Shown here in pieces: positions 15,691 to 50,418 of a DNA stretch of 64,000 nucleotides. Under the pieces are notes generated by a model. The model worked only from the letters and a program-made list of their open reading frames with translations. It searched no databases and had not been told where the DNA came from. Each line of letters starts with the position of its first letter. Position 1 is the first letter of the stretch. A program made the position numbers and the translations under genes. The stretch comes from Macrostomum hystrix (Eukaryota > Animalia > Platyhelminthes), in assembly GCA_950097015.1 (NCBI GenBank), contig CATNEN010000001.1:9610001-9674000 (forward strand), in the 5' to 3' direction.

Positions 15691-16185
15691 AAACGTCAAT
15701 CATAGCACTTTAGTACGTTGAGTTTTACTAGAAAACTATTTTAGAGATAGTTTTTGTTAAGCGAACAAAATGTCCTGTTTAAGTATTATACAATGTAACC
15801 TTATTTGCTTCTAATTATCGTGATGTAAAAGGAATAAATGTTCTTTATTGTAAATTAGTATTTTAATATTATATTGCATTTCAATCGTGTATTTTTATAT
15901 TCAAAAAATCAATAAGAAAACAATACTGATTAAACATATAATTAACTATGATGAAGTAAATCTGAAAATATGTGAATAAAAACTGCAATTTAAACACGAT
16001 TAATCAAGTTTGTACTAACTATGGCAACCCATATAGTTTTCCTGCGTTAAATTCAGGAACCATAGACTATACTCTTATTAACCCTTAGACCTGTGACCTT
16101 AGACCACATCGTCAGCCTCAATTGAGTGAGACCAGTAGGCTATTTCAGAGCCCGTGAAATGGTTGTCAGGGAGATGGTCTGGAAG

Positions 16186-16553
16186 GGGGGTCGGTGGCAG
16201 AGCGGTCAACGCGTTTGCCTCTCGCACCAAGGTCCCTAAGTTCGATTCCACGGCGAGGCCTCATTTATTTGGGGCGCAGCCGCCGAGAGAAGGCTTGGTG
16301 GCTTGTCGTGCAATTTACGCCTTGAGGGCCAACCTCCAAGGCACACTGAGTGTACCACTGCCTGACGATGAGAAAGTCAGGGCAGATGTACACACATGTG
16401 TGAGCGTGTGCCTGCGTACAGTATCTGTGTGCGTGTGTGCTCCGGAGTCAGCGAAATGGGCAGAATTGCCTCCTCGCTGGCTGCGGGTCTAGTGTCACCA
16501 AATGATGTGCCATTGCCCGCAGCCCTCCTGCAACTATTATTATTATTATTATT
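16186..16553 (+). mobile_element. Full-length tRNA-derived SINE family A with 12-bp TSD
   Basis: A-box TGGCAGAGCGG, B-box GTTCGATTCC, (TTA)n tail, TSD ATGGTCTGGAAG at 16174-16185 and 16554-16565. Confidence 0.92.
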
Positions 16554-16895: not shown

Positions 16896-19800
16896 TTAGC
16901 TTGTTTCCACATTAGCCGCAGCATCAGCCGCTGCCAACGCACTCTCCAAAAGTTTCAAGCCTTCAATAATTGTCTCCGGCTTTTTGTTGAGACAAATTCT
17001 CAGATAGCCGTGCCCAACAGTGGTCCGAAATTCTGCCGAATAAAACAGCGAAGCTGGAATGGCTGCTAGGCTGAAATGGCGAGTGATTGTCTCCACAATG
17101 GGCACGTCTGAAGCGGTGCCGAGTTCAAGCGGTTCAGTTAGAAGCGGCAATAGCCTTGGTGCCACCGGAATCAGCATAAACCACCCGCCATGAGGTAGCA
17201 CGCACGGCATTCCAAGTCGTGACAGCTCAGCCGCAGCCAAATCTCGATTCCTAACCAGATGGGCCTTCAATTCGGCTAGGCATGACGAAGCTGAATCATC
17301 ATCTACAGACAACCCAGCTGGTGAAATCTCTAAGCTGAGCACTCGACCAACAGCGGCCTGCAATAATCCGGAAACGCTATAGATCGCTTCACCTTGCACG
17401 GTGACCACGTGACGGATTAGCGAAGGCGGACCAACGCACCAACCAATGCGCCAGCCAGTGATGTTGAAACACTTGCCCGCACTGCCGATTGTGACGGTTC
17501 GTTCCCACATGCCTGCAGGATGAGACCAACTTGAGACTAGTAGATTTTGAGACCAATCTGACACATTCATCATTGGTTGATTTTGAGACCAATCTGACAC
17601 ATTCATCATTGGTAGATTTTGAGACCAATCTGACACATTCATCATTGGTTGCTTTTGAGACCAATCTGACACATTCATCATTGGTAGATTTTGAGACCAA
17701 TCTGATGCATTCATCATTGGTAGATTTTGAGACCAATCTGATACATTCATCATTGGTTGATTTTGAGACCAATCTGACACATTCATCATTGGTAGATTTT
17801 GAGACCAATCTGACACATTCATCATTGGTTGATTTTGAGACCAATCTGACACATTCATCATTGGTAGATTTTGAGACCAATCTGACACATTCATCATTGG
17901 TAGATTTTGAGACCAATCTGACACATTCATCATTGGTAGATTTTGAGACCAATCTGACACATTCATCATTGGTTGCTTTTGAGACCAATCTGACACATTC
18001 ATCATTGGTAGATTTTGAGACCAATCTGATGCATTCATCATTGGTAGATTTTGAGACCAATCTGATACATTCATCATTGGTTGATTTTGAGACCAATCTG
18101 ACACATTCATCATTGGTAGATTTTGAGACCAATCTGACACATTCATCATTGGTTGATTTTGAGACCAATCTGACACATTCATCATTGGTAGATTTTGAGA
18201 CCAATCTGACACATTCATCATTGGTAGATTTTGAGACCAATCTGACACATTCATCATTGGTTGATTTTGTGACCAATCTGACACATTCATCATTGGTAGA
18301 TTTTGAGACCAATCTGACACATTCATCATTGGTAGATTTTGAGACCAATCTGACACATTCATCATTGGTTGATTCTGAGACCAATCTGACACATTCATCA
18401 TTGGTAGATTTTGAGACCAATCTGACACATTCATCATTGGTAGATTTTGAGACCAATCTGATACATTCATCATTGGTTGATTTTGTGACCAATCTGACAC
18501 ATTCATCATTGGTAGATTTTGAGACCAATCTGATACATTCATTATTGGTAGATTTTGAGACCAATCTGACACATTCATCATTGGTAGATTTTGAGACCAA
18601 TCTGATACATTCATCATTGGTAGATTTTGAGACCAATCTGACACATTCATCATTGGTAGATTTTGAGACCAATCTGACACATTCATCATTGGTAGATTTT
18701 GAGACCAATCTGACACATTCATTATTGGTAGATTTTGAGACCAATCTGACACATTCATCATTGGTAGATTTTGAGACCAATCTGACACATTCATCATTGG
18801 TAGATTTTGAGACCAATCTGACACATTCATCATTTGTAGATTTTGAGACCAATCTGACACATACAACATTGGTTGATTTTGAGACCAATCTGACACATTC
18901 ATCATTGGTAGATTTTGAGACCAATCTGACACATTCATCATTGGTAGATTTTGAGACCAATCTGACACATTCATCATTTGTAGATTTTGAGACCAATCTG
19001 ACACATTCATCATTGGTAGATTTTGAGACCAATCTGATACATTCATCATTGGTTGATTTTGAGACCAATCTGACACATTCATCATTGGTTGATTTTGAGA
19101 CCAATCTGACACATTCATCATTGGTAGATTTTGAGACCAATCTGACACATTCATCATTGGTTGATTTTGAGACCAATCTGATACATTCATTATTGGTAGA
19201 TTTTGAGACCAATCTGATACATTCATCATTGGTTGATTTTGAGACCAATCTGACACATTCATCATTGGTTAATTTTGAGGCCAATCTGACACATTCATCA
19301 TTGGTTGATTTTGAGACCAATCTGACACATTCATCATTGGTAGATTTTGAGACCAATCTGACACATTCATCATTGGTAGATTTTGAGACCAATCTGACAC
19401 ATTCATCATTGGTAGATTTTGAGACCAATCTGACACATTCATCATTGGTAGATTTTGAGACCAATCTGACACATTCATCATTGGTAGATTTTGAGACCAA
19501 TCTGACACATTCATCATTGGTACTAGATTTTGAGACCAATCTGACACATTCATCATTGGTAGATTTTGAGACCAATCTGACACATTCATCATTGGTAGAT
19601 TTTGAGACCAATCTGACACATTCATCATTGGTAGATTTTGAGACCAATCTGACACATTCATCATTGGTTGATTTTGAGACCAATCTGACACATTCATCAT
19701 TGGTAGATTTTGAGACCAATCTGACACATTCATCATTGGTAGATTTTGAGACCAATCTGACACATTCATCATTGGTAGATTTTGAGACCAATCTGACACA

Positions 19801-21638
19801 TTCATCATTGGTAGATTTTGAGACCAATCTGATACATTCATTATTGGTAGATTTTGAGACCAATCTGACACATTCATCATTGGTAGATTTTGAGACCAAT
19901 CTGATACATTCATCATTGGTAGATTTTGAGACCAATCTGACACATTCATCATTGGTAGATTTTGAGACCAATCTGACACATTCATCATTGGTAGATTTTG
20001 AGACCAATCTGACACATTCATCATTGGTTGATTTTGAGACCAATCTGACACATTCATCATTGGTTGATTTTGAGACCAATCTGACACATTCATCATTGGT
20101 AGATTTTGAGACCAATCTGATACATTCATCATTGGTAGATTTTGAGACCAATCTGACACATTCATCATTGGTTGATTTTGAGACCAATCTGACATCGTAA
20201 TATAAAACTTTATATATTTAAACTTTTAACATTGATGAATATCGTTCGCACCTTCAATATTAGCCATTCTCTGTCGCTTTCCATCATCAGCAAGTGCTGT
20301 CCATTCGTACACATCGTCGCTGACGCAGACAACATCGAAGCGCTGACACAACTCGGCAAGCGCGGCCAGCTCCGACCTACTGTACACTTTTCCCAACGGA
20401 TTCTGTGGCGAGTTGAGCACTAGAAGTTTGGTACGATTCGAGAACGCATTGGTCAGTTGGTTGACATCCCAAACCCAATCATTTGCGCTTGTGATATTCT
20501 TGTTATCATTGGCAGGGGGAGGTCGCAGTGATACGAACACTGGTTTAGCTCCGGCAGCGCGTACCATGGACGGATAGCTATCGTAGTACGGCTCAATAAT
20601 CACCACCTCGTCGCCAGGATTAACAAATGCGTTGAATGCGTTGAACAAACAACCCTTGGGAAAGTGTAAATAAAGGCTTATTAAAAACTTTCTCGTGCTA
20701 ATTTAACAGGCAATCGAAGCAAGTTTTTACTTGTAATACCAATTTAATAGACAAGTAGTTTTCTAAAAACACACTTGCCTTCAAAATCCATAAAAATTCC
20801 TAAAATAGCAATGCAAATCCGGAAAAACTACGTAAGAACAAACGAAAAAGCTTTCCGTTTAAATTAAGACTAGACAAGCACACACCCAACCAATCACAAC
20901 GCGCCAATGGGGTACGAAAGCTTCTAACGTGCGATTAGGCGAGGGTAATTAACTATTTAACAACCAATCAGATTTAAAAGGAAAATTTCAGGAATGCTAG
21001 ATAATGGGGTTGTGTATAAGGAAAACAGGGAATGTATTACTACCCAAGTCAGCAGGTTTTCAACCAAAAGTGACTACAGCTAAACGAAATTAAAAAATGT
21101 TTCATAATTTATTGTTTAGTTATATTTTACCTGAGCTCCAACGCCAACAGAAATGCTACCATCAGTTGGTTGAATTTGACGACCGAATTCAATGCTGTAA
21201 ATCTTGGCCAACGCAGATACAAGTTCTGCATGGCCCACCAGAGGTGCATACTGATGCTGTATTGCTGACGCCTTTGGACTTAATCTGGCTTCTTCTAATA
21301 TGGCCTCAAGAGCTGCAGAAACTGCCTCGGGTGGATTGTAATCTGGTGCACCCTGCATCAGAATGGAAGTGCTTGTGGTAATCTACTTTTGTAGTTCAGT
21401 AAAACAATAAATTTCATTTATTTGCTACAAATACTTACTTGACCAAGATTGATCTTTGCATATTTGTCAGCTAAAACTTTGCATGATGACCTGCAGTAAA
21501 ATATAAGAAAAATACTGCTTTGTTTTTATTGAGTAACAGAACTTAAAAATAATGAAATGTAAAAAGACAAAAAACTAACCACAAATTCTTTGTCACATGG
21601 GAGTATCTATTTGCAATCACAAACTTTTCTGATGACAT
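16896..21638 (-). CDS. Kynurenine aminotransferase-like (class I PLP aminotransferase) paralog B, 5 exons, 450 aa
   Basis: Exons 21638-21580, 21490-21439, 21352-21131, 20654-20252 and 17512-16896 splice in frame (1353 nt). Motifs INLGQGAPD, IEPYYDSY, NSPQNPLGK, SDDVYEW, SAGKCFNITGWRIGW, GGWFM, YLRICLNK. Confidence 0.88.
17540..20195. repeat. 36-bp minisatellite (ttggtagattttgagaccaatctgacacattcatca), ~74 copies, KYAT-B intron 4
   Basis: Highly homogeneous tandem array; shares its core with the 14351-15690 array. Confidence 0.95.
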
Positions 21639-22684: not shown

Positions 22685-23400
22685 TTATATAATGCGCAAT
22701 TGGAATTTGCCGACTGTGATCTGCAGGAACTCACCAAACTTCTCTTTAGTCATGCCCTTATCATAAATTTGGTAGTGCACGACACCGACACCTGGACAAA
22801 TGGCCAAGCAGACGGTAACTCGAAGTCCTTTTTGAGTAGCCACTTGCCTGTATACGCGTTCACCACGTCGAGAGCGCCATATTGATCGTCTCATCCATTT
22901 ATTAAAGCAAATTCATCGATGAAAATCTTATAGCCTGATACGAAATCGACAGAACAAAGCCTCTCGCAAAACTCTCTCCGCGATTCGATCACACGAGGGG
23001 AGTTGCGATCTGCAGGGAGATCTCGTGCCAACTTAGTGGGATACACGAGCTCCATCAAGCTTAACGCTGATCGTTTTCTCCGTTACGTGCGGCTTTTCTG
23101 GGAGTTGCTGGCGGAGATTAGCATTCATTTTTTTAGCGTGATAAGCGGATTCGCTTAGATGAGGCCAAGTACGTGGGCCTGCATTTCTCCATCCCACTTG
23201 AATCGTTTGGCTCCCCCCTTGGGCTGCTTTTGAGCGCTTCCGGCCTGACCTCACAATTGTGTACGCCGTTGACCTCTTGACTCCAAGTTGGCGCGCCAGT
23301 TCCACAAAGTCATCCCCATGATTCCACAAGCAGCCTTGATGATACGGTCTCTGTCACTTGCTTACAGTAGAGTACCGACGAGGCTGCTGTTCAACGATAT
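22685..23400 (-). mobile_element. Degenerate Tc1/mariner-IS630 transposase remnant
   Basis: Frameshifted pieces: HTH (ELARQLGVKRSTAYTIV), NANLRQQLPEKPHVTEKTISVKLDG, PADRNSPRVIESRREF, IFIDE (first catalytic D), RSRRGERVYRQVATQKGLRVTVCLAI...F.EFL. Confidence 0.75.
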
Positions 23401-24053
23401 CTTCATCGACTTCTGCTTCAAATTCATCATCGATTCCCTTCTTCTTCCAGCAATTCATCGTCTTCTTCAATCTGATCTTCAGCATTCATATCGTTTCTTG
23501 TTGCGCAAAGATTGCACAGTTATGCAGTGCAGGAAAATAAAAAAATTGATTAATGTAATAAAAATTGTATCTGTGTCAAAAATCTCTGTTGAAATAGAAT
23601 GTGACATTGTTTCCTTTGAAGTTCAAGTTTGCGCGTGCGCGTCACTTGGGGACAATTTAGGCCATAGACAGTCTGAATTGAATTTCTTCTGTTTCAATAG
23701 AAAGGGACTTTGTTTGAACTGAATTTCCGCAAGCGCTGATATTTCTTAAAGTGTTTGAATTGAAGTTTTGTTTGTTTCTTTTGAACTAGACTTTGTTAAA
23801 AATAGGAGGTCAAATGTATGTTACATATGGCTCAGAAAGTGAGTTCAAATTCATCAGCCACTGCCCATGCAGTAGTCTATGGCCGGCTGGCTCAGAAAGT
23901 GAGTTTGATTTCGACAGTTCAAATACACCAAAAAGTATGGTGGCTATATAAGGTAAATTAAGGTAAAAAGTGAGTGAATATGAGGGTGGGTATGAGGTGG
24001 AGGGTTTAAGAGTTTAACTCAATTTGTTAGTAGTGTAAATGAAATGAAGTTAG

Positions 24054-25088
24054 GCGTGCTGCATCTTCTGTGGCGACGGCAGACCGCAGACGCACCCGAA
24101 ACGCCACTTCCTGAGGAGGCACGCGGAGGAGGCTGTGCGCCAATTCCGACTCGAGGATGCCCCAGTCAAGGTGCGGCCGTCCGAGGCATCTTGGGCAGCG
24201 GCGTCAGCCAAGCAGCGTGCCCAGATGGTCTGGCTCTGCCTGACGTGCAGCAACCACACGCGCAGCTCAGCCAACACTGAGCATGTACACGCGTGCCCAG
24301 CCTGCGGCAAGGTGCTGCGTAGGACAGCAAGGCAGCACAGTTGTCCAGCAGTGCCAGCTGTTGTCGCTACCGTTGCTGTGGAACACCAGCAGCCACCGCC
24401 TCCGCAGCAGATGCCACCACCGCCTCCGCAGCTGCCTTCAGAGGCAAAACCAGCTGAATACGAGGCTGGGTCTCTGTTGGCCGAGCTCTACAGCATCGCC
24501 GCGCCCTCCGTTGACGGTCGACAGTCAGCGGCCAGTGCTCGGCTGTCGTCAGCCAGCCGTCCAGCCGTCCGGCGACGCCTATTTGACCCGACTGCGCCGC
24601 TGCTGCTGATGTCCTCACAGGAGGCCCCCGTAGTCGCTGACGATGAGGATGATGGAGACTACGATGTCGGCTTGCAGGAGCTGCTGCCCGGAACCAGCAT
24701 CAGAATGCGGACGCTGCCGACGGTCCAGACGGTGGCAGCAGAGTCTTCCTCTTCGGCTGCCTGTCTGCAGTTGGCGGTGCAGGCCACCAAGGCAGCACTT
24801 TGTCGTCCCAGCACGTCATCGGCTGTGCTGTCAGCTGCACAGAGGCCGCTAGTGAAGCTGGCAGCTACCCGGCCGAGGCAGCGTCGAGCAGCTGCAGCAA
24901 AGTGGACTGCTGCAAAGAGAAGGCTGGCTAATGCCGAATTCTACCGGCTTCGACTCGCAGTCTTCGGGCCAGACCTGCAGGACGATGACAAAGAGACGAC
25001 GGCTTCGCCAAAAAAGCAGCAGCAGCAAAAGCAGCAGAGTCGATGTCGACACTTTCGCACGTCGCCCCCTGTGAAGCCGTGCCACTAG
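24054..25088 (+). pseudogene. Element-borne zinc-finger ORF (CIFC-x9-HFLRRH, CLTC, CPAC...HSC) with low-complexity tail
   Basis: The open frame begins right at the inner end of the left TIR (after TTAG, a possible acceptor) and continues as ORF 24135-25088. No ATG upstream of the finger. Confidence 0.45.
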
Positions 25089-25254
25089 AGCTGCTGCAGC
25101 CGTTGGGTGACCGGCCCAGCATCTCCGCAACGGTGGAACGCCTGCGGGAGCTGTGGTGGAGGGACCCATCGCGGGCCAGGATTGCGGCCAACTTGTGCCA
25201 CCAGCAGCGTTGGCGCGACATAAGTCGCCCTCCACCATTGGCTCCATCCAGCAG

Positions 25255-25821
25255 TCTGTGAGCAGGTTAGCTGCGCAGCTGGAGATGGACAGCCACCCTC
25301 GGCCAGAAGATCTGACGGTAATCTACTACGTGACTGCTGCAGTTGCCCGCAAGTTTCTGCAGAATCGGAGGTGCGACTCCTGCAGAGAGCTCCTTCTGGA
25401 ACAGGAAGAGGTGCTCCCGTTGTAGGCCGATTGGGTGCCGACTGAGGCGTCGTCCTTCTTCGAGCAAATCAACCGAGGAGGTTTGTGCCAGCCAACTGAA
25501 CTGGCTTTCGCCCTAGCTACGCATTACTGGAAAATCTTCGAGGAGATCCGGCGGAAGGAATCCCTTCGCAGGGTTTTCCTGACAGTGCAGCAGCAGCAGC
25601 AGGTGTTCTGTGGGCTCGTGGATGAGATGGCCGACGAAGATATCTTTCTGGAGTCCTTCATGCAACTGGTGACTTGCACACATGGCCACGATGTGAAGGC
25701 AGGCCTGGCCAAGGCTTTTTGCAACTGCATGATGAAGAATCTGGCCAAGAGCTGGAGCTCTCCAGCCGCGAAGGCGGAAAGAAGAGAAAGATCGCCAAGC
25801 TGTCCGGCCTCTCTGCCATGA
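25255..25821 (+). pseudogene. Transposase C-terminal remnant (P-element/THAP9-like pattern)
   Basis: IYYVTAAVARKFLQNRRCDSCRELL...*...FFEQINRGGLCQPTE...CTHGH...FCNCMMKN resembles the YiaGyva..C..C..rGGL..P C-terminal region of P-type transposases. In-frame stop at 25423-25425. Confidence 0.6.
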
Positions 25822-26357
25822 ATTGACATTATTTTTTATTTGCTATTTCCATTTAAAAGTATTTTCTATATTATTTTCTACATAAAATTTAGCATTTTAT
25901 AAAAGCATTTGTGCATTGCTCAGACCTAAATATATGAGGCCTAGGCCTATGTTATCTAATAATGAGGCTGAGATTACTTTATTCATTGCACTAACATCTC
26001 AATTCGAATCGTTTTGGCCACCGATGTGATTTAAGTCGGTCACTAGACCCCCCAAAAAGATCGATTTCCCACTGGTTTCTCATACATTAGTTGGCAATGG
26101 TTGCCACACTAAGGTAGATGCGGGCTGGGCGTTTCCAGTCCAGATTGCTATATATAGAAGTCCCTGATTCATCCATGATCTGAGCGCAGTAGCTTTAAAA
26201 CTTGTGGGACATATTTGTTGTCTATGGCCAAAAGTATGATAGCTACATAGCCTTTTGCTTAGTAGATAATTGAGTTTGTCCGCGAACTTTCTGAACAACC
26301 CTCGTATTATGACACCCTCTCTCATTCAGTTTGGTTGGAACGCAGGCCGTGGACAAT

Positions 26358-28731
26358 ATGCTTCGAGGAGCTCTGCTGCCATTGCTAGCTGGAGGTCGCA
26401 TGAGACGCCATGTAATGCTGATAGCCTTGCTCAGTTTGCTCAGCCTTACCGCTTTGCTTTTTCTAATGCGAAGCAGCAAGATGAGCAGTCCAGATGGAAT
26501 TGTGCGAATATTTCACCAATCTTGGAAGACCACCAAGCTGCCGCCGCGCTTCCACCGCTGGTCGAAGACTTTCTCCACCTGTTTGCCGGGCTGGAAGCGA
26601 AAACTCTGGACTGATGAAGACAACGAGAACTTGGTTGCTAAGCACTTTCCCTGGTTCCTGCCAACCTACAAGAAGCTTAACCAGCCAGTGGAGCGGGCAG
26701 ATGTATCTCGCCTGTTCTACATGTACAAGTACGGTGGAGTTTATTGCGACTTGGACTGCGAGTGCCTTAACCCTTTCGACCACCTATTTGCCAACGTCAG
26801 CTTGGCTTTCGGGGCTATGGCGGGCCACTCAACTGGGCCTGAAGACGAAAGGTAGGAAAATAGTCCAATTTCAAGTGTATTTTGCATCTCATTGTCTAAT
26901 CTCAGTGTCTAATCTCAGTGTCTAATCTCATTGTCTAATCTCAGTGTCTAATCTCATTGTCTAATCTCAGTGTCTAATCTCAGTGCCTGTTTGTCACCCT
27001 GCCTATGCCTGTTTGTCACCCTGCCTATGCCTGTTTGTCATCCTGCCTATGCCTGTTTGTCACCCTGCCTATGCCTGTTTGTCACCCTGCCTATGCCTGT
27101 TTGTCATCCTGCCTATGCCTGTTTGTCACCCTGACTATGCCTGTTTGTCACCCTGCAAATGCCTGTTTGTCATCCTGCCTATGCCTGTTTGTCACCTGCC
27201 TATGCCTGTTTGTCACCCTGCCTATGCCTGTTTGTCATCCTGCATATGCCTGTTTGTCATCCTGCCTATGCCTGTTTGTCACCCTGCATATGCCTGTTTG
27301 TCATCCTGCCTATGCCTGTTTGTCACCCTGCATATGCCTGTTTGTCACCCTGCCTATGCCTGTTTGTCACCCTGCCTATGCCTGTTTGTCATCCTGCCTA
27401 TGCCTGTTTGTCACCCTGCATATGCCTGTTTGTCACCCTGCCTATGCCTGTTTGTCACCCTGCCTATGCCTGTTTGTCATCCTGCCTATGCCTGTTTGTC
27501 ACCTGCCTATGCCTGTTTGTCATCCTGCCTATGCCTGTTTGTCACCCTGCATATGCCTGTTTGTCACCCTGCCTATGCCTGTTTGTCATCCTGCCTATGC
27601 CTGTTTGTCACCCTGCCTATGCCTGTTTGTCACCCTGCCTATGCCTGTTTGTCATCCTGCCTATGCCTGTTTGTCACCCTGCATATGCCTGTTTGTCACC
27701 CTGCCTATGCCTGTTTGTCATCCTGCCTATGCCTGTTTGTCATCCTGCCTATGCCTGTTTGTCATCCTGCATATGCCTGTTTGTCACCCTGCATATGCCT
27801 GTTTGTCACCCTGCCTATGCCTGTTTGTCATCCTGCCTTTGTCGACATTCGTTTGGGATTCATCGATTTTCGCCTATGAGGGCCACGCCCAAGGCACAGT
27901 GAGAGTGTACACTGCCTGACGATGAAAAAGTCTGGATAGTTGTACATACCTGTGTGCGTGCGTTCTCTGGAATCAGTGGAAGGGGCAGAATGGCCACCTC
28001 ACTGGCACTAATAAGAGTCAAGTTTCAGTTAAACGCCTGCATATGTGCATACCCTCTTCAAAAAAAACCTTTTAAATTGTGAGTTCTTAAAACACAGAAT
28101 ATAGAACGTGTATGTATGATTGACAGGCTGACAGGTATGGTGTAAGGAGGTTTCATTTTTCATTGCAATAAGTGTGTTCACGTCGCACGTATTTGAGCCA
28201 CTTCAAGACACGATCAATAAATGCACAATGACACTAACATATGTTTAGGCCCCGTTATTAAGTGTTGTAGCCATGTGTCACTATCCATAGCAGCATACTA
28301 ATAGTTAATTCAATGACCGAATCGCGCCCAGGTACATGGTGGAAGGCCAAATCGAGAACAGTTTCATGTACAGCGTGCCCGGACATCCATTCGTGATGGA
28401 GCTGATCAAACAGGTGGAGCAGAAGCCATTTGGATCACCCGAGGACACAACAGGCCCCTACCTGCTGATGCGGGCTATTAATAAGCGACGAAAATCACCT
28501 GGTGGCATGCCGGCCACCTATCGCGGCATGAAGTACCTGACAATATTTCCGCCGAATTACTTCAATCCGTTCACATGGCTCGGCCGTACCGAGCCCTCAT
28601 GTAAGGACAAGGGCAGATTCACTCGAGATGAAGAGGACCGCTGTCGAGCAGCGTTCAAGAACTCCAGCTTCGTTCTGCAATACCACACTCAGGTGTGGCT
28701 TGCAGGTGGCCAATATGTTAACCATGCTTAA
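26358..28731 (+). CDS. GT32-family DXD glycosyltransferase (SUR1/OCH1-like sugar-binding domain), type II membrane protein, 2 exons (26358-26851, 28332-28731), 297 aa
   Basis: N-terminal TM (LIALLSLLSLTALLFL), IFHQSWKT, LWTDED, RADVSR, YGGVYCDLD (DXD), NSFMYSVPGHPF, TGP. Donor AG|GTAGG and acceptor CCCAG|G join in phase 2. TATA-like TATATATA at 26149. Confidence 0.88.
26890..27838. repeat. 14-bp (gtctaatctcaKt) then 22-bp (tgcctatgcctgtttgtcaYcc) minisatellites in the GT32 intron
   Basis: Two abutting tandem arrays. Confidence 0.9.
27850..28010 (+). mobile_element. SINE family A internal fragment
   Basis: gagggccacgcccaaggcacagtgagagtgtacactgcctgacgatgaaaaagtc matches the SINE A body. Confidence 0.7.
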
Positions 28732-29784
28732 TGTGTACTTGTGTAGCCCAAATCTTATGAGATCTCACTAGTCCTAGCATGAGGGAGTTGAGACACGAAT
28801 TTAAATGGCTACAATGACAAATGAAACTATATTTGCAAGAAATTTGCAATCGGTAGCCTAATTGAACTAGTCATCGATATGACTACAGGTATAAATAATC
28901 ATATGATCATTTTAGCTTGAAAGAGACTAACCTAGATAGACCTGGTCCATTGAGACAAAGTTAACCCAGAAAAAAACATTTCTGTTACATTAAAATATTC
29001 GCCATGCGTATAAACTAGATCAGTGAATGAATTTTCAAGTGACCTAACTTACACTATGTCCCCAATAGTGTAAGTTAAGAGTACGAGTATTAATTAATTA
29101 TGTACTATAATTACAGTGTTGTAATTTTCGTCTTTCTTAATAATCTAAAGTAGTGATTGTCTTCTTCCACGGGTAGGTTCCACGTCACCCACTTGGAAGC
29201 CTAACTTAATTTCATATACACTACATACTAACCAATTGAGTTTAACTCTTACGCTCGTAAACCCTCCACCTCATATACCCTCCTTTTTTGTGTATTTGAA
29301 CTGTCGAAATCAAACTCACTTTCCGAGCCAGCCGGCCATAGACTACTGCATGGGCAGTGGCTGATGAATTTGAACTCACTTTCTGAGCCATATTATACTA
29401 ATGTCTAACAGATTACACTGAAAATCTGAACTGAAATTCTGTTTATGATGCGCCAAAAAAAGAAAGATTTTTGTTGAAAATGTTAATAAAGGCAGCCATA
29501 GAAGAGCCAGCCACCTGTTGTTTTATCGATCTACCAAAATAACAAGCTCAAAAGAAAAACAAAAGATGCTAAAATAACGCTTAGAATTGACAGATTGAAC
29601 AGAACAATACTCAAGCCCCTCTCTAGTAAGCGACAAGAACTTTGTTCGCGACAGGTTCCTTTGAATTGTCAACTAAAAATGGATTGAACGTCGCTTTTGA
29701 GACATAATTTGACACCGGTACAAGTAGAAAGTTTCATTTTTTGTGCCTAACTCGTCTTTCTCTCGTACGAGCTAATAAAGGTTT

Positions 29785-29935
29785 GTGAGCTCGATTGCGT
29801 GGCTAGACCACATTCTATTTGGGGCGCAGCCGCGGAGAGAACGCTTGGGTACGGATGTACACAACTGTTTGAGTGTGTGCTCATGAATCAGTAGGTCAGG
29901 GGAACGGGCAGAATTGCTTTGGTAGGCCACACTAG
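29785..29935 (+). mobile_element. Degenerate SINE family A fragment
   Basis: gagctcgattgcg...tatttggggcgcagccgcggagagaa...gatgtacac...gggcagaattgc. Confidence 0.6.
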
Positions 29936-29944
29936 ACAGAAAAA

Positions 29945-30296
29945 CTCCGTTATTAATCAGGCTATCTAGACCTTCAACTCGCCAAACTGTCGAACCGCTC
30001 TCGTTACCAACCAGCCTCTCGAGGCATGCGCCAGACGAGGCATACGAAAGCGACGTCGGCACGTCTTTGCCGACTATCACCAGCTGGCAAAGCCGACTCG
30101 GTCGCGCAAATATGGCCAGAACACAGTTTTTCTTCTGACAGGCCGACAGACAATGGAACTTTGACAGCATCGGGCTGGACAGCCTGACATCGATGACGTC
30201 ACAGTTCACGGAGGTGTTCAGCAGTAGCGGACTACTCGTCACCAAGTACCGACGTACTTGGTTAGGGATAGTTGGATTCCATGACTGACCGTGAGC
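29945..30296 (-). other. Possible exon/pseudo-exon encoding a PAN/Apple-like Cys-rich module
   Basis: Cys spacing in SKFHCLSACQKKNCVLAIFARPSRLCQL resembles PAN domains. No clear start exon; the frame runs into a SINE fragment. Confidence 0.35.
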
Positions 30297-30944
30297 TGAT
30301 TGGATTAACGATTAAAAGATGTTCTAGTTTAAAAAACTGCACAGGTAGAAAATCATCAGTAATTTAACAACGCTCTCTTATCCGCCATGAGTATAACAAA
30401 CGGCCATAAAAATCCAAATAACGTTTTCATTCAACAAGCTTTACAACAGTGTCTGGTTTAACGTCGGTTAAAAAGTAGCGAGAACTCCTACTCCTACTCC
30501 TAAGAGTGTTCTTAAAATTTTTTGTCTTTCTTGACAAGAGCTCTAAGCCAAACATTTCATCGTATTGAGTGGATCGATGCAGCGAAAAAACTGACCTTGT
30601 CAGGCTGAAAAAGCCAATAACGGATGAAGCCTTAAAACCATGCATGCTTGTTAAATAAAAATTCATAAAATGCTTTTGTCCGTGCCAAAAAATGCTGCGT
30701 TACGCATAAGAGCTCAAGAGCTGCTAGTTGGGTGGCTGACAAAAAATTGAAGATGACTGTGAGGATGTATGACCCTAAGCCTCCATGTGTTTCGAAGCGC
30801 TACTGTTCGTGCGTGTTTCCAACAAGTCTAACTCTGATGCCACTCCAAAAGACATCGCCTGACACAGCTTCCCAGCGAACTGTTCAACCAATAGCAGCAT
30901 GAATCAGCACAACAGCTTCATCAACTTTAACCCATTTAGTTACA

Positions 30945-33900
30945 TCACACACCCATCCTCAGTTCCATCCCACAGCCAAACTCAGTTCCATCCCACACCC
31001 AACCTCAGTTCCATCTCACACCCAACCTCAGTTTCATCTCACACCCAACCTCAGTTCCATCCCACACCCAACCTCAGTTCCATCCCACACCCAACCTCAG
31101 TTCCATCTCACACCCAACCTCAGTTCCATCTCACACCCAACCTCAGTTCCATCCCACACCCAACCTCAGTTCCATCTCACACCCAACCTCAGTTCCATCT
31201 CACACCCAACCTCAGTTCCATCTCACACCCAACCTCAGTTCCATCTCACACCCAACCTCAGTTCCATCCCATCTCACACCCAACCTCAGTTCCATCCCAC
31301 ACCCAACCTCAGTTCCATCCCACACCCAACCTCAGTTCCATCTCACACCCAACCTCAGTTCCATCTCACACCCAACCTCAGTTCCATCCCACACCCAACC
31401 TCAGTTCCATCTCACACCCAACCTCAGTTCCATCCCATCTCACACCCAACCTCAGTTCCATCCTACACCCAACCTCAGTTCCATCCTACACCTAACCTCA
31501 GTTCCATCCCACACCCAACCTCAGTTCCATCCCACACCCAACCTCAGTTCCATCCCACACCCAACCTCAGTTCCATCTCACACCCAACCTCAGTTCCATC
31601 CCACACCCAACCTCAGTTCCATCTCACACCCAACCTCAGTTCCATCCCACACCCAACCTCAGTTCCATCTCACACCCAACCTCAGTTCCATCTCACACCC
31701 AACCTCAGTTCCATCTCACACCCAACCTCAGTTCCATCCCACACCCAACCTCAGTTCCATCCCACACCCGACCTCAGTTCCATCCCATCTCACACCCAAC
31801 CTCAGTTCCATCCCATCCCACACCCAACCTCAGTTCCATCTCACACCCAACCGCAGTTCCATCTCACACCCAACCTCAGTTCCATCCCACACCCAACCTC
31901 AGTTCCATCTCACACCCAACCTCAGTTCCATCTCACACCCAACCTCAGTTCCATCCCACACCCAACCTCAGTTCCATCCCACACCCAACCTCAGTTCCAT
32001 CCCACACCCAACCTCAGTTCCATCTCACACCCAACCTCAGTTCCATCCCACACCCAACCTCAGTTCCATCTCACACCCAACCTCAGTTCCATCTCACACC
32101 CAACCTCAGTTCCATCCCACACCCAACCTCAGTTCCATCCCACACCCAACCTCAGTTCCATCCCACACCCAACCTCAGTTCCATCCCACACCCAACCTCA
32201 GTTCCATCCCACACCCAACCTCAGTTCCATCCCACACCCAACCTCAGTTCCATCTCACACCCAACCTCAGTTCCATCTCACACCCAACCTCAGTTCCATC
32301 TCACACCCAACCTCAGTTCCATCCCACACCCAACCTCAGTTCCATCTCACACCCAACCTCAGTTCCATCCCACACCCAACCTCAGTTCCATCTCACACCC
32401 AACCTCAGTTCCATCCACACCCAACCTCAGTTCCATCCCACACCCAACCTCAGTTCCATCCCACACCCAACCTCAGTTCCATCCACACCCAACCTCAGTT
32501 CCATCCCACACCCAACCTCAGTTCCATCCCACACCCAACCTCAGTTCCATCCCACACCCAACCTCAGTTCCATCCCACACCCAACCTCAGTTCCATCCCA
32601 CACCCAACCTCAGTTCCATCCCACACCCAACCTCAGTTCCATCTCACACCCAACCTCAGTTCCATCCCACACCCAACCTCAGTTCCATCCCACACCCAAC
32701 CTCAGTTCCATCCCACACCCAACCTCAGTTCCATCCCACACCCAACCTCAGTTCCATCCCACACCCAACCTCAGTTCCATCCCACACCCAACCTCAGTTC
32801 CATCTCACACCCAACCTCATGTTCCATCTCACACCCAACCTCAGTTCCATCTCACACCCAACCTCAGTTCCATCCCACACCCAACCTCAGTTCCATCCAC
32901 ACCCAACCTCAGTTCCATCTCACACCCAACCTCAGTTCCATCCCACACCCAAACTCAGTTCCATCTCACACCCAACCTCAGTTCCATCTCACACCCAACC
33001 TCAGTTCCATCTCACACCCAACCTCAGTTCCATCCCACACCCAACCTCAGTTCCATCCCACACCCAACCTCAGTTCCATCCCACACCCAACCTCAGTTCC
33101 ATCCCACACCCAACCTCAGTTCCATCTCACACCCAACCTCAGTTCCATCTCACACCCAACCTCAGTTCCATCCCACACCCAACCTCAGTTCCATCCCACA
33201 CCCAACCTCAGTTCCATCCCACACCCAACCTCAGTTCCATCCCACACCCAACCTCAGTTCCATCCCACACCCAACCTCAGTTCCATCTCACACCCAACCT
33301 CAGTTCCATCCCACACCCAACCTCAGTTCCATCTCACACCCAACCTCAGTTCCATCCCATCTCACACCCAACCTCAGTTCCATCCCACACCCAACCTCAG
33401 TTCCATCCCACACCCAACCTCAGTTCCATCTCACACCCAACCTCAGTTCCATCTCACACCCAACCTCAGTTCCATCCCACACCCAACCTCAGTTCCATCC
33501 CACACCCAACCTCAGTTCCATCCCACACCCAACCTCAGTTCCATCCCACACCCAACCTCAGTTCCATCTCACACCCAACCTCAGTTCCATCCCACACCCA
33601 ACCTCAGTTCCATCTCACACCCAACCTCTGTTCCATCTCACACCCAACCTCAGTTCCATCCCACACCCAACCTCAGTTCCATCCCACACCCAACCTCAGT
33701 TCCATCCCACACCCAACCTCAGTTCCATCCCACACCCAACCTCAGTTCCATCCCACACCCAACATCAGTTCCATCCCACACCCAACCTCAGTTCCATCCC
33801 ACACCCAACCTCAGTTCCATCTCACACCCAACCTCAGTTCCATCCCACACCCAACCTCAGTTCCATCCCACACCCAACCTCAGTTCCATCCCATCTCACA

Positions 33901-35255
33901 CCCAACCTCAGTTCCATCTCACACCCAACCTCAGTTCCATCCCACACCCAACCTCAGTTCCATCCCACACCCAACCTCAGTTCCATCTCACACCCAACCT
34001 CAGTTCCATCCCACAGCCAACATCAGTTCCATCCCACACCCAACCTCAGTTCCATCTCACACCCAACCTCAGTTCCATCCCACACCCAACCTCAGTTCCA
34101 TCCCACACCCAACCTCAGTTCCATCCCACACCCAACCTCAGTTCCATCCCATCTCACACCCAACCTCAGTTCCATCTCACACCCAACCTCAGTTCCATCC
34201 CACACCCAACCTCAGTTCCATCCCACACCCAACCTCAGTTCCATCTCACACCCAACCTCAGTTCCATCCCACACCCAACCTCAGTTCCATCCCACACCCA
34301 ACCTCAGTTCCATCTCACACCCAACCTCAGTTCCATCCCACAGCCAACATCAGTTCCATCCCACACCCAACCTCAGTTCCATCCCACAGCCAACATCAGT
34401 TCCATCCCACACCCAACCTCAGTTCCATCCCACACCAAACCTCAGTTCCATCCCACACCCAACCTCAGTTCCATCTCACACCCAACCTCAGTTCCATCTC
34501 ACACCCAACCTCAGTTCCATCTCACACCCAACCTCAGTTCCATCCCACACCCAACCTCAGTTCCATCCCACACCCAACCTCAGTTCCATCCCACAGCCAA
34601 CATCAGTTCCATCCCACACCCAACCTCAGTTCCATCCCACACCCAACCTCAGTTCCATCTCACACCCAACCTCAGTTCCATCCCACACCCAACCTCAGTT
34701 CCATCTCACACCCAACCTCAGTTCCATCCCACACCCAACCTCAGTTCCATCTCACACCCAACCTCAGTTCCATCTCACACCCAACCTCAGTTCCATCTCA
34801 CACCCAACCTCAGTTCCATCCCACACCCAACCTCAGTTCCATCCCACACCCAACCTCAGTTCCATCTCACACCCAACCTCAGTTCCATCTCACACCCAAC
34901 CTCAGTTCCATCCCACACCCAACCTCAGTTCCATCTCACACCCAACCTCAGTTCCATCTCACACCCAACCTCAGTTCCATCTCACACCCAACCTCAGTTC
35001 CATCCCACACCCAACCTCAGTTCCATCTCACACCCAACCTCAGTTCCATCCCACACCCAACCTCAGTTCCATCTCACACCCAACCTCAGTTCCATCTCAC
35101 ACCCAACCTCAGTTCCATCCCACACCCAACCTCAGTTCCATCTCACACCCAACCTCAGTTCCATCCCACACCCAACCTCAGTTCCATCTCACACCCAACC
35201 TCAGTTCCATCCCACACCCAACCTCAGTTCCATCCCACACCCAACCTCAGTTCCA
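30945..35255. repeat. 23-bp minisatellite (cacacccaacctcagttccatcY), ~185 copies
   Basis: 4.3-kb homogeneous array with extreme C/G strand skew. Confidence 0.95.
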
Positions 35256-35815
35256 CCATACAAAAAAGCAATAAATACAAATGCAAAACCAAATAAAAGT
35301 TATTGGACAAACATAAAAGTTGATTTGTTGATTTTAAAAAGTTTTGTTCGTTTAGAAAAAGAAAAAGAATTTATTGATTTAAGTAAATTGTAATCTACTT
35401 AACAGCAAGACAGGATTATTGACACGGCAAACGATATAACTGTATCTTGCAACCAAATTGGTGTTACCGTTCGCGGCATGAATTGTGTAAATATACTTTA
35501 CAGATGGGGAGTCACAAGGAAAAAACTCCATAGACTATCACACGCAAATGAGAGACAAAGACAGCGGAGACAAGCTATTAAATTTGGTAAAATTTTATCC
35601 GATTGTAGAAACTAATTTCCCTTTAAAATAATTTAATTATAAAGAATCTATTTTAAAAAACTGTCAGAATTACGAAGACATTAATGAGAAAGGAATTATA
35701 AAAAATAAAAAGTAATGATTTAAGGCTTTTTAATTCTATAAGACACAGCTATTTAATTGATTATTTAAACAGCTGTTAGTTAATTAAGAGTTGAATAACA
35801 AAAAACTTTGTTTTT

Positions 35816-48005: not shown

Positions 48006-50418
48006 ATGGACTTCAAAGAACTCAAAAAATTTGTACATGCGGAAACAGTGACAACAGACGCATCGAGTGCAGGTGTTGGAGCGCCTAAAGCTTCTGCAGT
48101 TGTCAACTTGGAATTGTTGGCCGAAAATTCTGTTTCGAGAGATTCTGCCAATGGCAGTCAGACCACTGTGTTTGACCATCTGATGTTCATTTTTAAACTC
48201 TGGTGGCGCCATTTGACCATGCGAGTTCGCGTGCCCAATGACGATATGGAAGAGCTGCAGAGGAGCTGCCAATTGGAGAAAAGGCAAATTGTGCGACTCT
48301 ATAAACAATTCCGCCTGCTTGTGGACAATCCGTCAAGAGACATACTATGTGTGGTGAGGCTCGGGAGTTTTTATGATGATTATTGGGCTGACTGCGGGAC
48401 GCCACATTTAAAAGGTTTTACGCCTACCTGTAAACAGGTACATAACTCCATACTAGCAGATTGAACATGAAGTATAATAACCATATCTAACACTCAGATG
48501 GCAGTGTCTCATAGGTAGAGAACCGTGTCTAACAGGTAGAGAACCGTGTCTAACAGTTAGAGAACCGTGTTTAACAGGTAGAGAACCGTGTCTAACAGGT
48601 AGAGAACAGTGTCTAACAGGTAGAGAACCGTGTCTAACAGGTAGAGAACCGTGTCTAACAGGTAGAGAACCGTGTCTAACAGGTAGAGAACAGTGTCTAA
48701 CAGGTAGAGAACAGTGTCTAACAGGTATACAACCGTATCTAACAGGTAGAGAACCGTGTTTAACAGGTAGAGAACCGTGTCTAACAGGTAGAGAACCGTG
48801 TCTAACAGGTAGAGAACCGTATCTAACAGGTATACAACCGTATCTAACAGGTATACAACCGTATCTAACAGGTATACAACCGTATCTAACAGGTATACAA
48901 CCGTATCTAACAGGTATACAACCGTATCTAACAGGTATACAACCGTATCTAACAGGTATACAACCGTATCTAACAGGTATACAACCGTATCTAACTGGTA
49001 GACAATCATGTCGAACAGGCAGATAATTGTATCTAACAGTTGATAGTTAATTACAATTTTAACAGGAGGATTTGCAAACCCACAGCTCGTTGCTAGCAGG
49101 CAACCCATTAAAGAAGTACATCTACCGGATGCTATTCTGTAACCGGGAGCAGCTAACCTTTGTTGAATTCGTCAAGAATCTGTCGCTGACACTTTCGAAT
49201 TGCATCGGCTGTCCTCATTTGCACATGGTGAAGTCTATGGCAGAGACTGCCTATTATATGGGCGCCACAAGTCCCAAGGATGTGATCCAGGTGCAGAAGC
49301 TGCTGACCCTATTTAATTGCTTCGATCTGAAAAAAATTGGTAAATTTCTCTTAGCGGATGTCTTAATTTACTTTAATCGTCCAGAATTTTCAAGCATATC
49401 CAGAATCTTGATTCTAAATGCTCACAAATGTACATCTACGAATATGCACATCTACGCATATGTACATCTACGCATATGTACATCTACGCATATGTACATC
49501 TACGCATATGTTACATCTACGCATATGTACATCTACGCATATGTACATTTACGCATATGTACATTTACGCATATGTACATTTACGCATATGTACATTTTC
49601 ACATACGCACATTTACGCATATGTACATTTTCAACATACCCTTGAACATATCCTTGAACAATAGCTGCGTCTGTGCCACAGGCTGCACATACATCTGGCC
49701 CAAGAGTGCATCTAAGAATAAAGTGCAGGGATAAGTGGCCACAGCGGTAAACGTGTTTGCGTCTCGGACCAAGGTCCCTGAGCTCGATTCCGCGGCGTGG
49801 CCACTTTTAGTTGGGGCGCAGCCGCGGAGAGAAGGCTTGAAGGCTTGTCGTGCAATTCACGCCCTTGAGGGCCAACCTGCTAGGCAGAGTGAGAGTGTAC
49901 AGTGCCTGACGATGAGAAAGTCAGGGCAGATGTACACACCTGTGTGAGCGAGTCAGTGAAATGGGCAGCATTGCCTCCTCTCTGGCTGCGGGTCTAGTGT
50001 CACCAAATGCTGTGCCAGTGCCCGCAGCTCTCCAGGCTCGTTGCGGAGACTTAAAAAAAGCAAAAATGTAACAAAACACTCAGGAGTCCTGGACACCAAC
50101 AGTCTGGGCCAGCTGCTCTACGATCTTCTGCGCTGCGACTCGGATTTCAGTGTCAGCAGTCTGGTGCCACCGTCGATGATGAGCCGCATGGTCAATACGG
50201 CCATTGTCAGCGTACACGAACGCTACCCCGGCATCTGCGCCGTCATCTGCGGCCCGGCTAAGGACCGCCAATCCAGCACTTCCGGCCCGTCGTTTTCCAG
50301 TCCTTCGGAGTGGCGCAGATGCAGCCACGAGGGACACAAAATGGTGCTGACTAGAGAGATCTTCGTGCGCGACCAAGAGAACCTGCATCTGGATCAGCTG
50401 CTGGCGATGCGCATTTGA
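48006..50418 (+). CDS. Calcineurin B homologous (CHP/CNB/CIB-like) EF-hand protein, divergent; exons 48006-48353, 49066-49339, 50084-50418, 318 aa
   Basis: EELQRSCQLEKRQIVRLYKQF..DNPSRDILCV|EDLQ...NPL...QLTFVEFVKNLS...KLLTLFNCFDLKKIG|VLDTNSL follows the CHP/CNB pattern. An alternative in-frame donor after 48437 is also possible. Confidence 0.7.
48510..49040. repeat. 21-bp minisatellite (ctaacaggtagagaaccgtgt), CHP-like intron 1
   Basis: About 24 units in two variant blocks; the sense strand carries CTAACAG|GTA. Confidence 0.9.
49428..49630. repeat. 16-bp minisatellite (tacgcatatgtacatY), CHP-like intron 2
   Basis: Tandem units with palindromic CATATG/TGTACA. Confidence 0.85.
49728..50033 (+). 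mobile_element. SINE family A copy (intronic)
   Basis: tRNA head plus full body, without the (TTA)n tail. Confidence 0.85.

What the first reader, a model, noticed from the sequence alone, without database searches (positions are those of the whole stretch)
23825..29393. Cargo-carrying long-TIR transposon containing an intact, intron-bearing glycosyltransferase gene
Seen: ~190-230-bp inverted repeats (outer ~105 bp almost identical, each with an internal direct repeat TGGCTC(A/G)GAAAGTGAGTT) end at GG...CC with ATAT on both flanks and diverge at the same inner point. Between them, all on the + strand, are a zinc-finger ORF, a decayed P/THAP9-like transposase tail and a complete 297-aa GT32 gene with its own TATA-like box and intron. 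Established: Pack-type elements moving host genes are well known in plants and fungi but rarely described in animals; AT/AWWT TSDs fit the ISL2EU or Sola groups rather than P (8-bp TSD). Inference: a chimeric non-autonomous element that mobilises or amplifies a glycan-modifying enzyme. This is the best candidate for an undescribed system in the window.
Basis: partly seen in the sequence, partly recalled or inferred. Interest (0 to 1): 0.82.

Follow-up and report, generated by a model that had tools for sequence, protein, structure and literature searches.

The report
Patchwork Tc1-type transposon enclosing a gene copy
A single, non-autonomous jumping-gene shell of the common Tc1/mariner type in a flatworm genome encloses scraps of three other repeats and an intact young duplicate of a sugar-transferase gene, but nothing shows that it has ever moved or multiplied that gene.

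Summary
The described anatomy is real: 117-nt, 97% inverted repeats at 23825-23941/29277-29393 extend to about 231/195 nt, and each arm carries two direct repeats.

**Arms.** They belong to a Tc1/mariner family, not ISL2EU, Sola or P. A profile of the arms finds 48 hits in the genome, 38 of them in 19 inverted pairs. The one 1.63-kb copy I read for ORFs encodes a DDE_3 transposase; that copy and a second show TA at 4 of 4 ends. The window's arms are a unique variant lacking the family's outer 17 nt.

**Interior.** It is a patchwork:
- an internal fragment of an orphan multi-copy ORF ("X")
- the 3' part of a THAP9/P-like element with its own TIR
- 133 bp of another transposon
- a 2.7-kb block holding the two-exon, 297-codon GT32 gene

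**GT32 paralogue.** The block is 93-97% identical, intron included, to a copy on contig C39. That copy lies in unique DNA without these repeats. Both copies are intact, with pN/pS of about 0.3.

**Verdict.** This is a single-copy chimeric element. Capture is plausible; mobilisation or amplification is unsupported. Interest is modest. Earlier scan notes resolved similar cargo claims elsewhere in this genome as nested insertions.

The parts
23225..23816 (.). Left flank: end of another repeat ('B'), a different Tc1-like element; not part of the element
   Evidence: 41 matches in the own genome, many ending at query 592 = window 23816, with inverted partners. tblastn of the Tc1-like transposase hits window 22703-23326 at 27% identity, E 6e-10.
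23826..23827 (.).
   Evidence: Sequence. The two sequenced copies that carry the transposase region (ORF read in one) have TA at 4 of 4 ends.
23828..24055 (+). Left arm of the Tc1/mariner-family ('T') TIR, with two direct repeats at 23828-23857 and 23888-23917
   Evidence: Aligns to family TIRs. Profile R1 hit at E 7.9e-18.
24052..25224 (+). Internal fragment of the orphan multi-copy repeat 'X' (the CxxC-rich ORF), truncated at both ends and frameshifted
   Evidence: 95% over 1177 nt to L052. X copies extend at least 940 bp further upstream in 6 or more loci and further downstream. 19 protein-level matches. No Pfam, PHROG or PDB match, and no hit in the word search of the large protein collection.
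25241..26170 (+). 3' part of a THAP9/P-like transposon: transposase C-terminus with an internal stop at 25423-25425, a 3' non-coding part, and its own terminal repeat at 26135-26170
   Evidence: 94-95% to two copies (C12, C39) and 93% to two shorter ones (C39, C29). L051's 668-aa ORF has THAP (E 1.8e-15) and TNP-like_RNaseH_N (E 5.3e-13). Inverted match of 26135-26170 to the other end of L051's copy. 63 protein-level matches.
26178..26310 (+). Terminal 133 bp of another TIR transposon family ('Z')
   Evidence: 91-97% to 7 other loci, all starting at the same point, plus one inverted partner 4.3 kb away on C39. Junction alignment.
26314..29042 (+). GT32 block: a DNA-level duplicate shared with C39:16758446-16761290
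   Evidence: 97% (166 nt), 96% (500 nt) and 93% (1239 nt) to L050, intron included. No other homology between the 64-kb window and 12 kb of the C39 locus except a common short repeat.
26358..26851 (+). GT32 exon 1: signal anchor and DXD-containing domain
   Evidence: PF04488 at E 2.3e-15. Paralogue alignments end at residues 164-169, near the exon end.
26852..28331 (+). Intron (GT...AG), filled with 13-nt and 22-nt tandem arrays at about 26886-27853
   Evidence: The intron and its arrays are shared with the C39 copy.
28332..28731 (+). GT32 exon 2, stop codon included
   Evidence: PF04572 at E 2.6e-5. No gaps against the C39 copy, 3 amino-acid differences.
29043..29198 (.). 156 bp with no other match in the genome
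29199..29390 (-). Right arm of the T-family TIR, with direct repeats at 29301-29330 and 29361-29390
   Evidence: R1 hit at E 1.9e-17.
29391..29392 (.). Right TA (putative TSD)

Best explanation
This is one single-copy, non-autonomous derivative of a Tc1/mariner-type (IR-DR style) transposon family of Macrostomum hystrix. It sits at a TA site. Its transposase gene is gone, and 5.1 kb of unrelated DNA lies between the arms: an internal piece of the orphan repeat X, the 3' end of a P/THAP9-like element, 133 bp of transposon Z, and a 2.7-kb genomic (intron-containing) duplicate of a GT32 glycosyltransferase gene.

The pieces meet at breakpoints with 3 to about 16 bp of filler. The most likely origin (inferred) is break repair or template switching inside the element, or nesting followed by deletions. 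Either way the gene copy was enclosed; there is no sign of an element that shuttles the gene.

The GT32 copy is intact and has evolved under constraint since the duplication, so it is probably a working paralogue. Its upstream DNA is now all transposon-derived (inferred promoter). Nothing shows that the composite moved after acquiring the gene.
For: Arms and direct repeats.

Family: profile R1 gives 48 hits (150 of about 30,000 candidates scored), with 38 in 19 convergent pairs; 16 of the 19 pairs span 0.9-3.0 kb and 6 span 1617-1633 bp. The L054 copy has a 404-aa ORF with DDE_3 (E 3.7e-15) and HTH_32. TA sits at 4 of 4 ends of L054 and L055.

No transposase remnant lies between the arms.

Patchwork and junctions.

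GT32 block versus C39. The C39 copy has 458 bp of unique DNA upstream and at least 1.2 kb of mostly unique DNA downstream, and no R1 hit within 2 Mb.

It is not a homeologous block: the neighbouring aminotransferase exon has no C39 copy.

Both copies are open, with 9 synonymous and 10 non-synonymous differences, pN/pS about 0.31, one-sided binomial P 0.013.

Single element rather than two: both arms share the same truncated terminus and the same 27-nt and 20-nt deletions relative to the family, and a shared inner stretch that BLAST does not find in the eight family loci compared; a right-arm query including part of it finds only the left arm genome-wide.
Against: There is only one copy, so mobility and the true TSD cannot be shown. 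TA is low-information and the flanks are AT-rich.

The arms lack the outermost 17 nt found in every other family member aligned, so they may not be functional ends at all.

The left edge of the GT32 homology lies 3 bp from the natural end of Z. The block may therefore once have been longer and been interrupted by ordinary insertions.

The direction of duplication (C39 to C1, or the reverse) is not established. No outgroup or second haplotype could be examined. Expression was not tested.
Confidence: 0.55

Rival explanations
1. A true Pack-type Tc1/mariner element. The GT32 block and the TE scraps were captured elsewhere, and the whole 5.6-kb composite then transposed into this TA site using a transposase supplied by transposase-encoding family members.
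For: Arms with two retained direct repeats each, the likely transposase-binding sites. TA on both sides. At least one copy with an open 404-aa transposase ORF (read in L054) is present in the genome, and five further pairs have the same 1617-1633-bp span. Arm identity (95% overall, about 98% in the outer 113 nt) is at least as high as the identity of the GT32 block to its paralogue (93-97%), so capture before arrival is not excluded. The paralogue sits in unique DNA, as a parental locus would.
Against: There is no second copy and no empty site. The termini differ from those of all other members. TIR identity cannot date an insertion, because family members have TIRs only 91-99% alike. No other GT32 paralogue is TIR-flanked: only the window's own copy, of the 51 hits checked, lies near a family TIR.
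Confidence: 0.22
2. An ordinary transposon nest. A T element (or two remnants of one) sits around or beside a resident GT32 gene, and X, P and Z arrived by normal insertion and were trimmed by deletions. The C39 gene would then be the derived copy, or both would come from a plain segmental duplication unrelated to the arms.
For: The region is TE-dense: B, X, P and Z all lie within 3 kb. P and Z each end at a natural terminus. The GT32 homology starts 3 bp from Z's end. Another family member (C7) spans 14.7 kb and includes retroelement ORFs. Earlier scan notes on this genome reached 'nested insertion' for similar cargo claims (unchecked).
Against: X is an internal fragment with neither natural end. 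The P/Z junction has 7 nt of filler and no clean nested junction. Two remnants of a variant found nowhere else in 220 Mb, truncated at the same nucleotide, are unlikely to be independent. The window's copy keeps only 45 bp of the upstream sequence it shares with C39.
Confidence: 0.2
3. Assembly artefact: a chimeric join of repeat-rich reads.
For: Dense repeats and long tandem arrays in and around the region. The paper reports residual haplotype duplication in the assembly.
Against: The assembly is a highly contiguous, polished long-read assembly (42 contigs). The stretch read has no N. The flanks are unique on the right. The two GT32 copies differ by about 3-7% and by a 141-nt indel, so they are not collapsed haplotypes.
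Confidence: 0.03

Closest known systems
Tc1/mariner (IS630-Tc1-mariner) transposons with long IR-DR type inverted repeats, and their non-autonomous derivatives
   Same: The arms align to the roughly 170-nt TIRs of genomic elements that encode a DDE_3 + HTH transposase. Repeated GAAAGTGAGTT-type motifs lie inside each arm, and TA sits on both sides. The name 'IR-DR' and its link to transposase binding are recalled, not tested.
   Different: There is no transposase. The element is 5.6 kb, against 0.9-3.0 kb for 16 of 19 family pairs. The outermost 17 nt of the family TIR are absent. The interior is foreign DNA rather than an internally deleted transposase gene.
Pack-type / transduplicating DNA transposons (Pack-MULEs of plants; Turmoil-1 of C. 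elegans)
   Same: TIR-bounded and transposase-less, with an interior assembled from unrelated genomic pieces whose source-like copies lie elsewhere. Pack-MULEs: PMC5861414, seen as search listing and start of abstract. Turmoil-1: PMC2572040, start of abstract, which states that transduplication of protein-coding genes was then unknown in animals.
   Different: Pack elements are defined on multi-copy or demonstrably transposed elements and mostly hold gene fragments. Here there is one copy, a complete intron-containing gene, and most other pieces are TE scraps. The superfamily is Tc1/mariner, not Mutator.
P element / THAP9 transposons
   Same: The 25241-26170 piece is homologous to the C-terminus and 3' end of elements whose ORF has THAP and TNP-like RNase H domains.
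   Different: It is an enclosed, 5'-truncated passenger with its own terminal repeat at 26135-26170. The outer arms are unrelated to it, and no 8-bp duplication flanks them (the 8-bp rule is recalled).
GT32-type glycosyltransferases (Pfam Gly_transf_sug + Gb3_synth; A4GALT/A4GNT-like type II membrane enzymes)
   Same: Both Pfam domains are above their cut-offs, with an N-terminal hydrophobic anchor and a DLD (DXD) motif. The assignment to CAZy GT32 and the A4GALT/A4GNT comparison are recalled.
   Different: It is one of a very large lineage-specific expansion: 93 exon-level matches in this genome. Donor and acceptor are unknown.

Membership tests
Tc1/mariner superfamily (outer arms) | Terminal repeats homologous to those of elements encoding a DDE_3 (DD[E/D]) transposase | tested here: met
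   Alignment A1 and profile R1. The window arms score E 8e-18 and 2e-17. Six pairs span 1617-1633 bp; the one read for ORFs (L054) carries a 404-aa DDE_3+HTH_32 ORF.
Tc1/mariner superfamily (outer arms) | TA target-site duplication | tested here: met
   TA is present directly outside TGGCTC...GAGCCA on both sides, and at 4 of 4 ends of the two sequenced 1.63-kb copies, L054 and L055. Caveat: the palindromic ATAT equally allows AT or ATAT, and one copy gives little power.
Tc1/mariner superfamily (outer arms) | Same terminal nucleotides as the family (TA|CCTTTTCAA...) | tested here: not met
   Both arms start TA|TGGCTCAG and lack the outer 17 nt present in the 9 other family ends aligned.
Tc1/mariner superfamily (outer arms) | Own transposase gene (autonomy) | tested here: not met
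   tblastn of the family transposase against 23001-30200 gives nothing better than E 0.03.
Pack-type / transduplicating transposon | TIR-bounded, no transposase, interior holds host gene sequence with a separate genomic copy | tested here: met
Pack-type / transduplicating transposon | Evidence that the composite transposed (two or more copies with different flanks, or an empty site) | tested here: not met
   The arm variant occurs only here. The C39 paralogue is not TIR-flanked. Only the window's copy, of 51 GT32 hits, is near a family TIR.
P element / THAP9 (as identity of the whole element) | Outer ends are P-type TIRs with an 8-bp TSD | tested here: not met
   The outer arms are Tc1/mariner-family. 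The 8 nt outside the arms differ. The P-like piece has its own TIR at 26135-26170.
   There is no such transposase in or near the element. The arms are homologous to TIRs of DDE_3 Tc1/mariner elements. The TSD rules of ISL2EU and Sola were not checked against a source.
GT32-type glycosyltransferase | Gly_transf_sug (DXD) domain plus Gb3_synth C-terminal region, open reading frame | tested here: met
   PF04488 at 57.5 bits (cut-off 23) on exon 1 and PF04572 at 24.8 bits (cut-off 22.3) on exon 2, searched exon by exon. No stops in either exon.

The most novel reading that the evidence does not exclude
A Tc1/mariner-derived Pack-type element in an animal that captured a complete, intron-bearing, still-constrained host glycosyltransferase gene and carried it to a new chromosome location. 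It would supply the gene with a transposon-derived promoter, giving a DNA-transposon route to whole-gene duplication in flatworms.
Probability: 0.2. Interest if true: 0.6.

Novelty: new member of a known kind. Interest (0 to 1): 0.3.

Why it matters
If the composite did move as a unit, it would be a rare animal example of a cut-and-paste transposon duplicating a whole working gene. That process is documented mainly in plants. It would also hint at how the very large GT32 family of this flatworm (93 exon-level hits) grows.

As the evidence stands, it is one more chimeric, dead-looking transposon shell. It is a useful annotation point: the GT32 copy on C1 is a young paralogue with TE-derived upstream DNA, and the resident Tc1/mariner family with IR-DR-like ends is now defined. 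It is not evidence for a new system.

Tried and rejected
**Readings rejected**
- ISL2EU/Sola/P assignment of the arms: rejected. See the membership rows.
- Whole-genome-duplication (homeologue) origin of the two GT32 copies: rejected. The neighbouring aminotransferase exon has no C39 copy, and 12 kb around the C39 gene share nothing else with the 64-kb window.
- Retrocopy origin: rejected. The intron and its tandem arrays are shared.
- X as the element's own gene: rejected. X copies extend beyond both breakpoints and are never next to these arms.
- The Tc1-like element in L015 as partner of the C29b end: rejected. It has its own perfect 118-nt TIRs 5 kb away. Only its first 8 or so nucleotides resemble the family terminus.

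**Steps that led nowhere**
- Paralogous empty site: the left flank is a repeat, but it ends 8 nt before the arm, and the right flank is unique.
- Identity of X: Pfam, PHROGs, PDB sequences and one word search of the large protein collection gave nothing. That blank covers only proteins 0.55-1.75 times the query length.
- Dating by arm identity: abandoned, because family TIRs are imperfect.
- Literature on Tc1/mariner gene capture: one search returned nothing specific. No claim of absence from print is made beyond that search.

**Papers and supplements**
- PMC10468722: passages only.
- PMC2572040, PMC5861414 and PMC6710886: listing and start of abstract.
- PMC6431247: listing only.
- Supplements were not opened. 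The repeat annotation of the M. hystrix paper may hold a TE library that names these families.

**Not done:** expression, structure prediction, and the exhaustive representative search.

Full report
**Source.** The window is C1:9,610,001-9,674,000 of a 220,453,370-bp assembly in 42 contigs. Total length, contig number, N50 (13,505,968) and longest contig (35,345,953) equal those in Table 1 of the Macrostomum hystrix genome paper (PMC10468722, passages read; contig lengths). Earlier scan notes also name this flatworm. No relatives of this genome are available to the tools.

**Observation.** The repeat finder gives arms 23825-23941 and 29277-29393, 117 nt and 97% complementary, with weaker inverted similarity to 24055/29199. 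A global alignment has 187 matches and 9 mismatches, with a 46-nt indel and two small ones. The outer 113 nt or so differ at 2 positions. Each arm holds two direct repeats 60 nt apart. Outside the arms the similarity stops at ATAT on both sides.

**What the arms are.** BLAST-type searches find this arm only here, plus four partial, diverged hits. A 28-nt core occurs 6 times at up to 3 mismatches, against 0 for the reversed control.
- Aligning those loci and searching the genome with a sequence-only profile (R1) gave 48 hits at E <= 0.01; only 150 of about 30,000 candidates were scored.
- Of the 48 hits, 38 form 19 convergent pairs and 10 are unpaired.
- Of the 19 pairs, 16 span 0.9-3.0 kb and 6 span 1617-1633 bp. 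One spans 174 bp, the window's spans 5554 bp, and one on C7 spans 14.7 kb.
- Of two 1.63-kb copies fetched, the one listed for ORFs (L054) has a 404-aa ORF with DDE_3 (E 3.7e-15) and HTH_32. Both have roughly 170-nt TIRs (91-99% between arms) and TA at 4 of 4 ends, the repeat starting CCTTTTCAAC.

That such elements favour A-TA-T-like targets is my recollection, not a test. The window's arms are a unique variant. Both lack the outer 17 nt of the family repeat, share 27-nt and 20-nt deletions, and share an inner stretch of about 90 nt that BLAST did not find in the eight family loci compared; a query covering part of the right arm's stretch found only the left arm genome-wide. Two independent remnants would not be cut at the same nucleotide, so I take them as the two ends of one element. 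No transposase remnant lies between them.

**What lies inside.**
- **X fragment, 24052-25224.** It is 95% identical to an orphan repeat X. Other X copies carry 575-656-aa open frames. They run at least 940 bp further upstream in 6 or more loci and further downstream. The window therefore holds an internal fragment, frameshifted near 25040-25090. X has CxxC pairs but no Pfam, PHROG or PDB-sequence match, and no hit in one word search of the large protein collection.
- **P/THAP9-like fragment, about 25241-26170.** This is the 3' part of a P/THAP9-like element. It is 94-95% identical to two copies and 93% to two shorter ones, and about 70% to many more, with 63 protein-level matches. A related 668-aa ORF has THAP and TNP-like_RNaseH_N domains.
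- **Z fragment, 26178-26310.** This is the terminal 133 bp of a further TIR family Z, found at 7 other loci at 91-97%.
- **Junctions.** They carry about 16, 7 and 3 nt that match neither neighbour.
- **GT32 block, 26314-29042.**
- **Unique stretch, 29043-29198.** It has no other match in the genome.

**The GT32 gene.** Exon 1 matches PF04488 and exon 2 matches PF04572, both above their cut-offs. Donor GT at 26852 and acceptor AG at 28331 keep the frame; 494+400 nt give 297 codons plus a stop. Many paralogue alignments end at residues 164-169, next to the exon end at 165, which fits a conserved intron position. The genome holds 93 exon-level matches.
- **C39 paralogue.** One paralogue, on C39, is 93-97% identical at DNA level across 26314-29042, including the intron and its tandem arrays. 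It has 141 extra in-frame nucleotides in exon 1. A 248-nt inverted copy of its exon-2 end lies 1.4 kb downstream.
- **Its setting.** The C39 copy has 458 bp of unique DNA upstream and at least 1.2 kb of mostly unique DNA downstream. It has no family TIR within 2 Mb.
- **Constraint.** The coding differences are 9 synonymous and 10 non-synonymous. pN/pS is about 0.33 for exon 1 and 0.28 for exon 2. The expected non-synonymous share is 0.78, giving a one-sided P of 0.013. At least one copy has therefore stayed under constraint.
- **Not a homeologue.** A neighbouring host exon (aminotransferase-like, 16899-17540) has no copy on C39, so this is a small duplication.
- **No other flanked copy.** Of the 51 best GT32 hits of the 93, only the window's copy lies within 80 kb of a family TIR.

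**Reading.** The structure is a chimeric, non-autonomous Tc1/mariner-derived element enclosing a young GT32 paralogue.
- **For capture:** the fragments are internal pieces joined through short filler, and the paralogue sits in unique DNA.
- **For ordinary nesting:** P and Z end at their natural termini, the GT32 homology begins 3 nt from Z's end, the region is TE-dense, and another family member (C7) has swollen to 14.7 kb and includes retroelement ORFs.
- **Against any claim of mobilisation or amplification:** there is one copy, altered termini, and no other TIR-flanked GT32.

I put 0.55 on 'single immobile composite formed in place or of undatable origin', 0.22 on 'captured and then transposed as a unit', 0.20 on 'plain nest around a resident gene', and 0.03 on artefact.

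**Comparison with the known.** It works like a Pack-type or transduplicating element in architecture. Those are mainly documented in plants (PMC5861414, abstract start). An early animal case is Turmoil-1 of C. elegans (PMC2572040, abstract start). It fails the membership feature that matters, which is evidence of transposition after capture. The arms are members of a Tc1/mariner family by homology but fail the terminal-nucleotide feature.

**Limits.**
- There is no other haplotype or species, and no expression data.
- Genome searches score only the best candidates, so the counts are lower bounds.
- Supplements of the genome paper, which may hold a repeat library, were not seen.

Noticed in passing
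window 22703-23816: The left flank is the end of another Tc1-like element family ('B'). It has 41 genome matches and roughly 230-nt inverted ends, and a weak transposase remnant (27% identity, E 6e-10). It ends 8 nt before the arm.
   Followed up: partly
L052 (C38:33201500-33206499) and 8 other loci: Repeat X has a 575-656-aa open frame with CxxC pairs plus a downstream 361-aa ORF. There are 9 or more loci, 96-99% alike at DNA level over 1.2 kb. It has no Pfam, PHROG or PDB match and no hit in the word search of the large protein collection. It is an orphan, recently amplified element of unknown class.
   Followed up: partly
own genome, e.g. C5:1.31-1.34 Mb, C5:3.27-3.30 Mb, C38:13.77-13.86 Mb: There is a very large GT32-like family: 93 exon-level matches to exon 1, many in tandem clusters.
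   Followed up: no
window 16896-20200 and 30899-35296: Kilobase-scale tandem arrays read open in several frames. The first abuts the last exon of an aminotransferase-like gene (16899-17540, minus strand).
   Followed up: no
window 1-280, 2029-2349, 16185-16551, 49735-50033, 63417-63773, 27866-27956: A dispersed repeat of about 350 nt is present five times in the window. A 90-nt piece of it lies inside the GT32 intron, and it also occurs at the C39 locus.
   Followed up: no
L050/L053 (C39:16762489-16762736): A 248-nt inverted duplicate of the 3' end of GT32 exon 2 lies 1.4 kb downstream of the C39 gene, 98% identical to it.
   Followed up: no
L051 (C39:7354500-7359499): An internally deleted P/THAP9-like element (668-aa ORF, own TIRs) lies directly beside an ORF with FLYWCH and MULE transposase domains.
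   Followed up: no
C7:8551095-8565790 (L018): The closest relative of the window's arms forms a 14.7-kb inverted pair that includes ORFs with RT-thumb and DUF3504 matches. It is a second swollen member of the same Tc1/mariner family.
   Followed up: partly
L015 3276-4886 (C29:5975490-5977100): A young Tc1-like element has 118-nt perfect inverted ends within longer, near-perfect inverted similarity of about 160 nt and a 353-aa DDE_3 ORF. Its terminus begins with the same 8 or so nucleotides as the family described here.
   Followed up: partly
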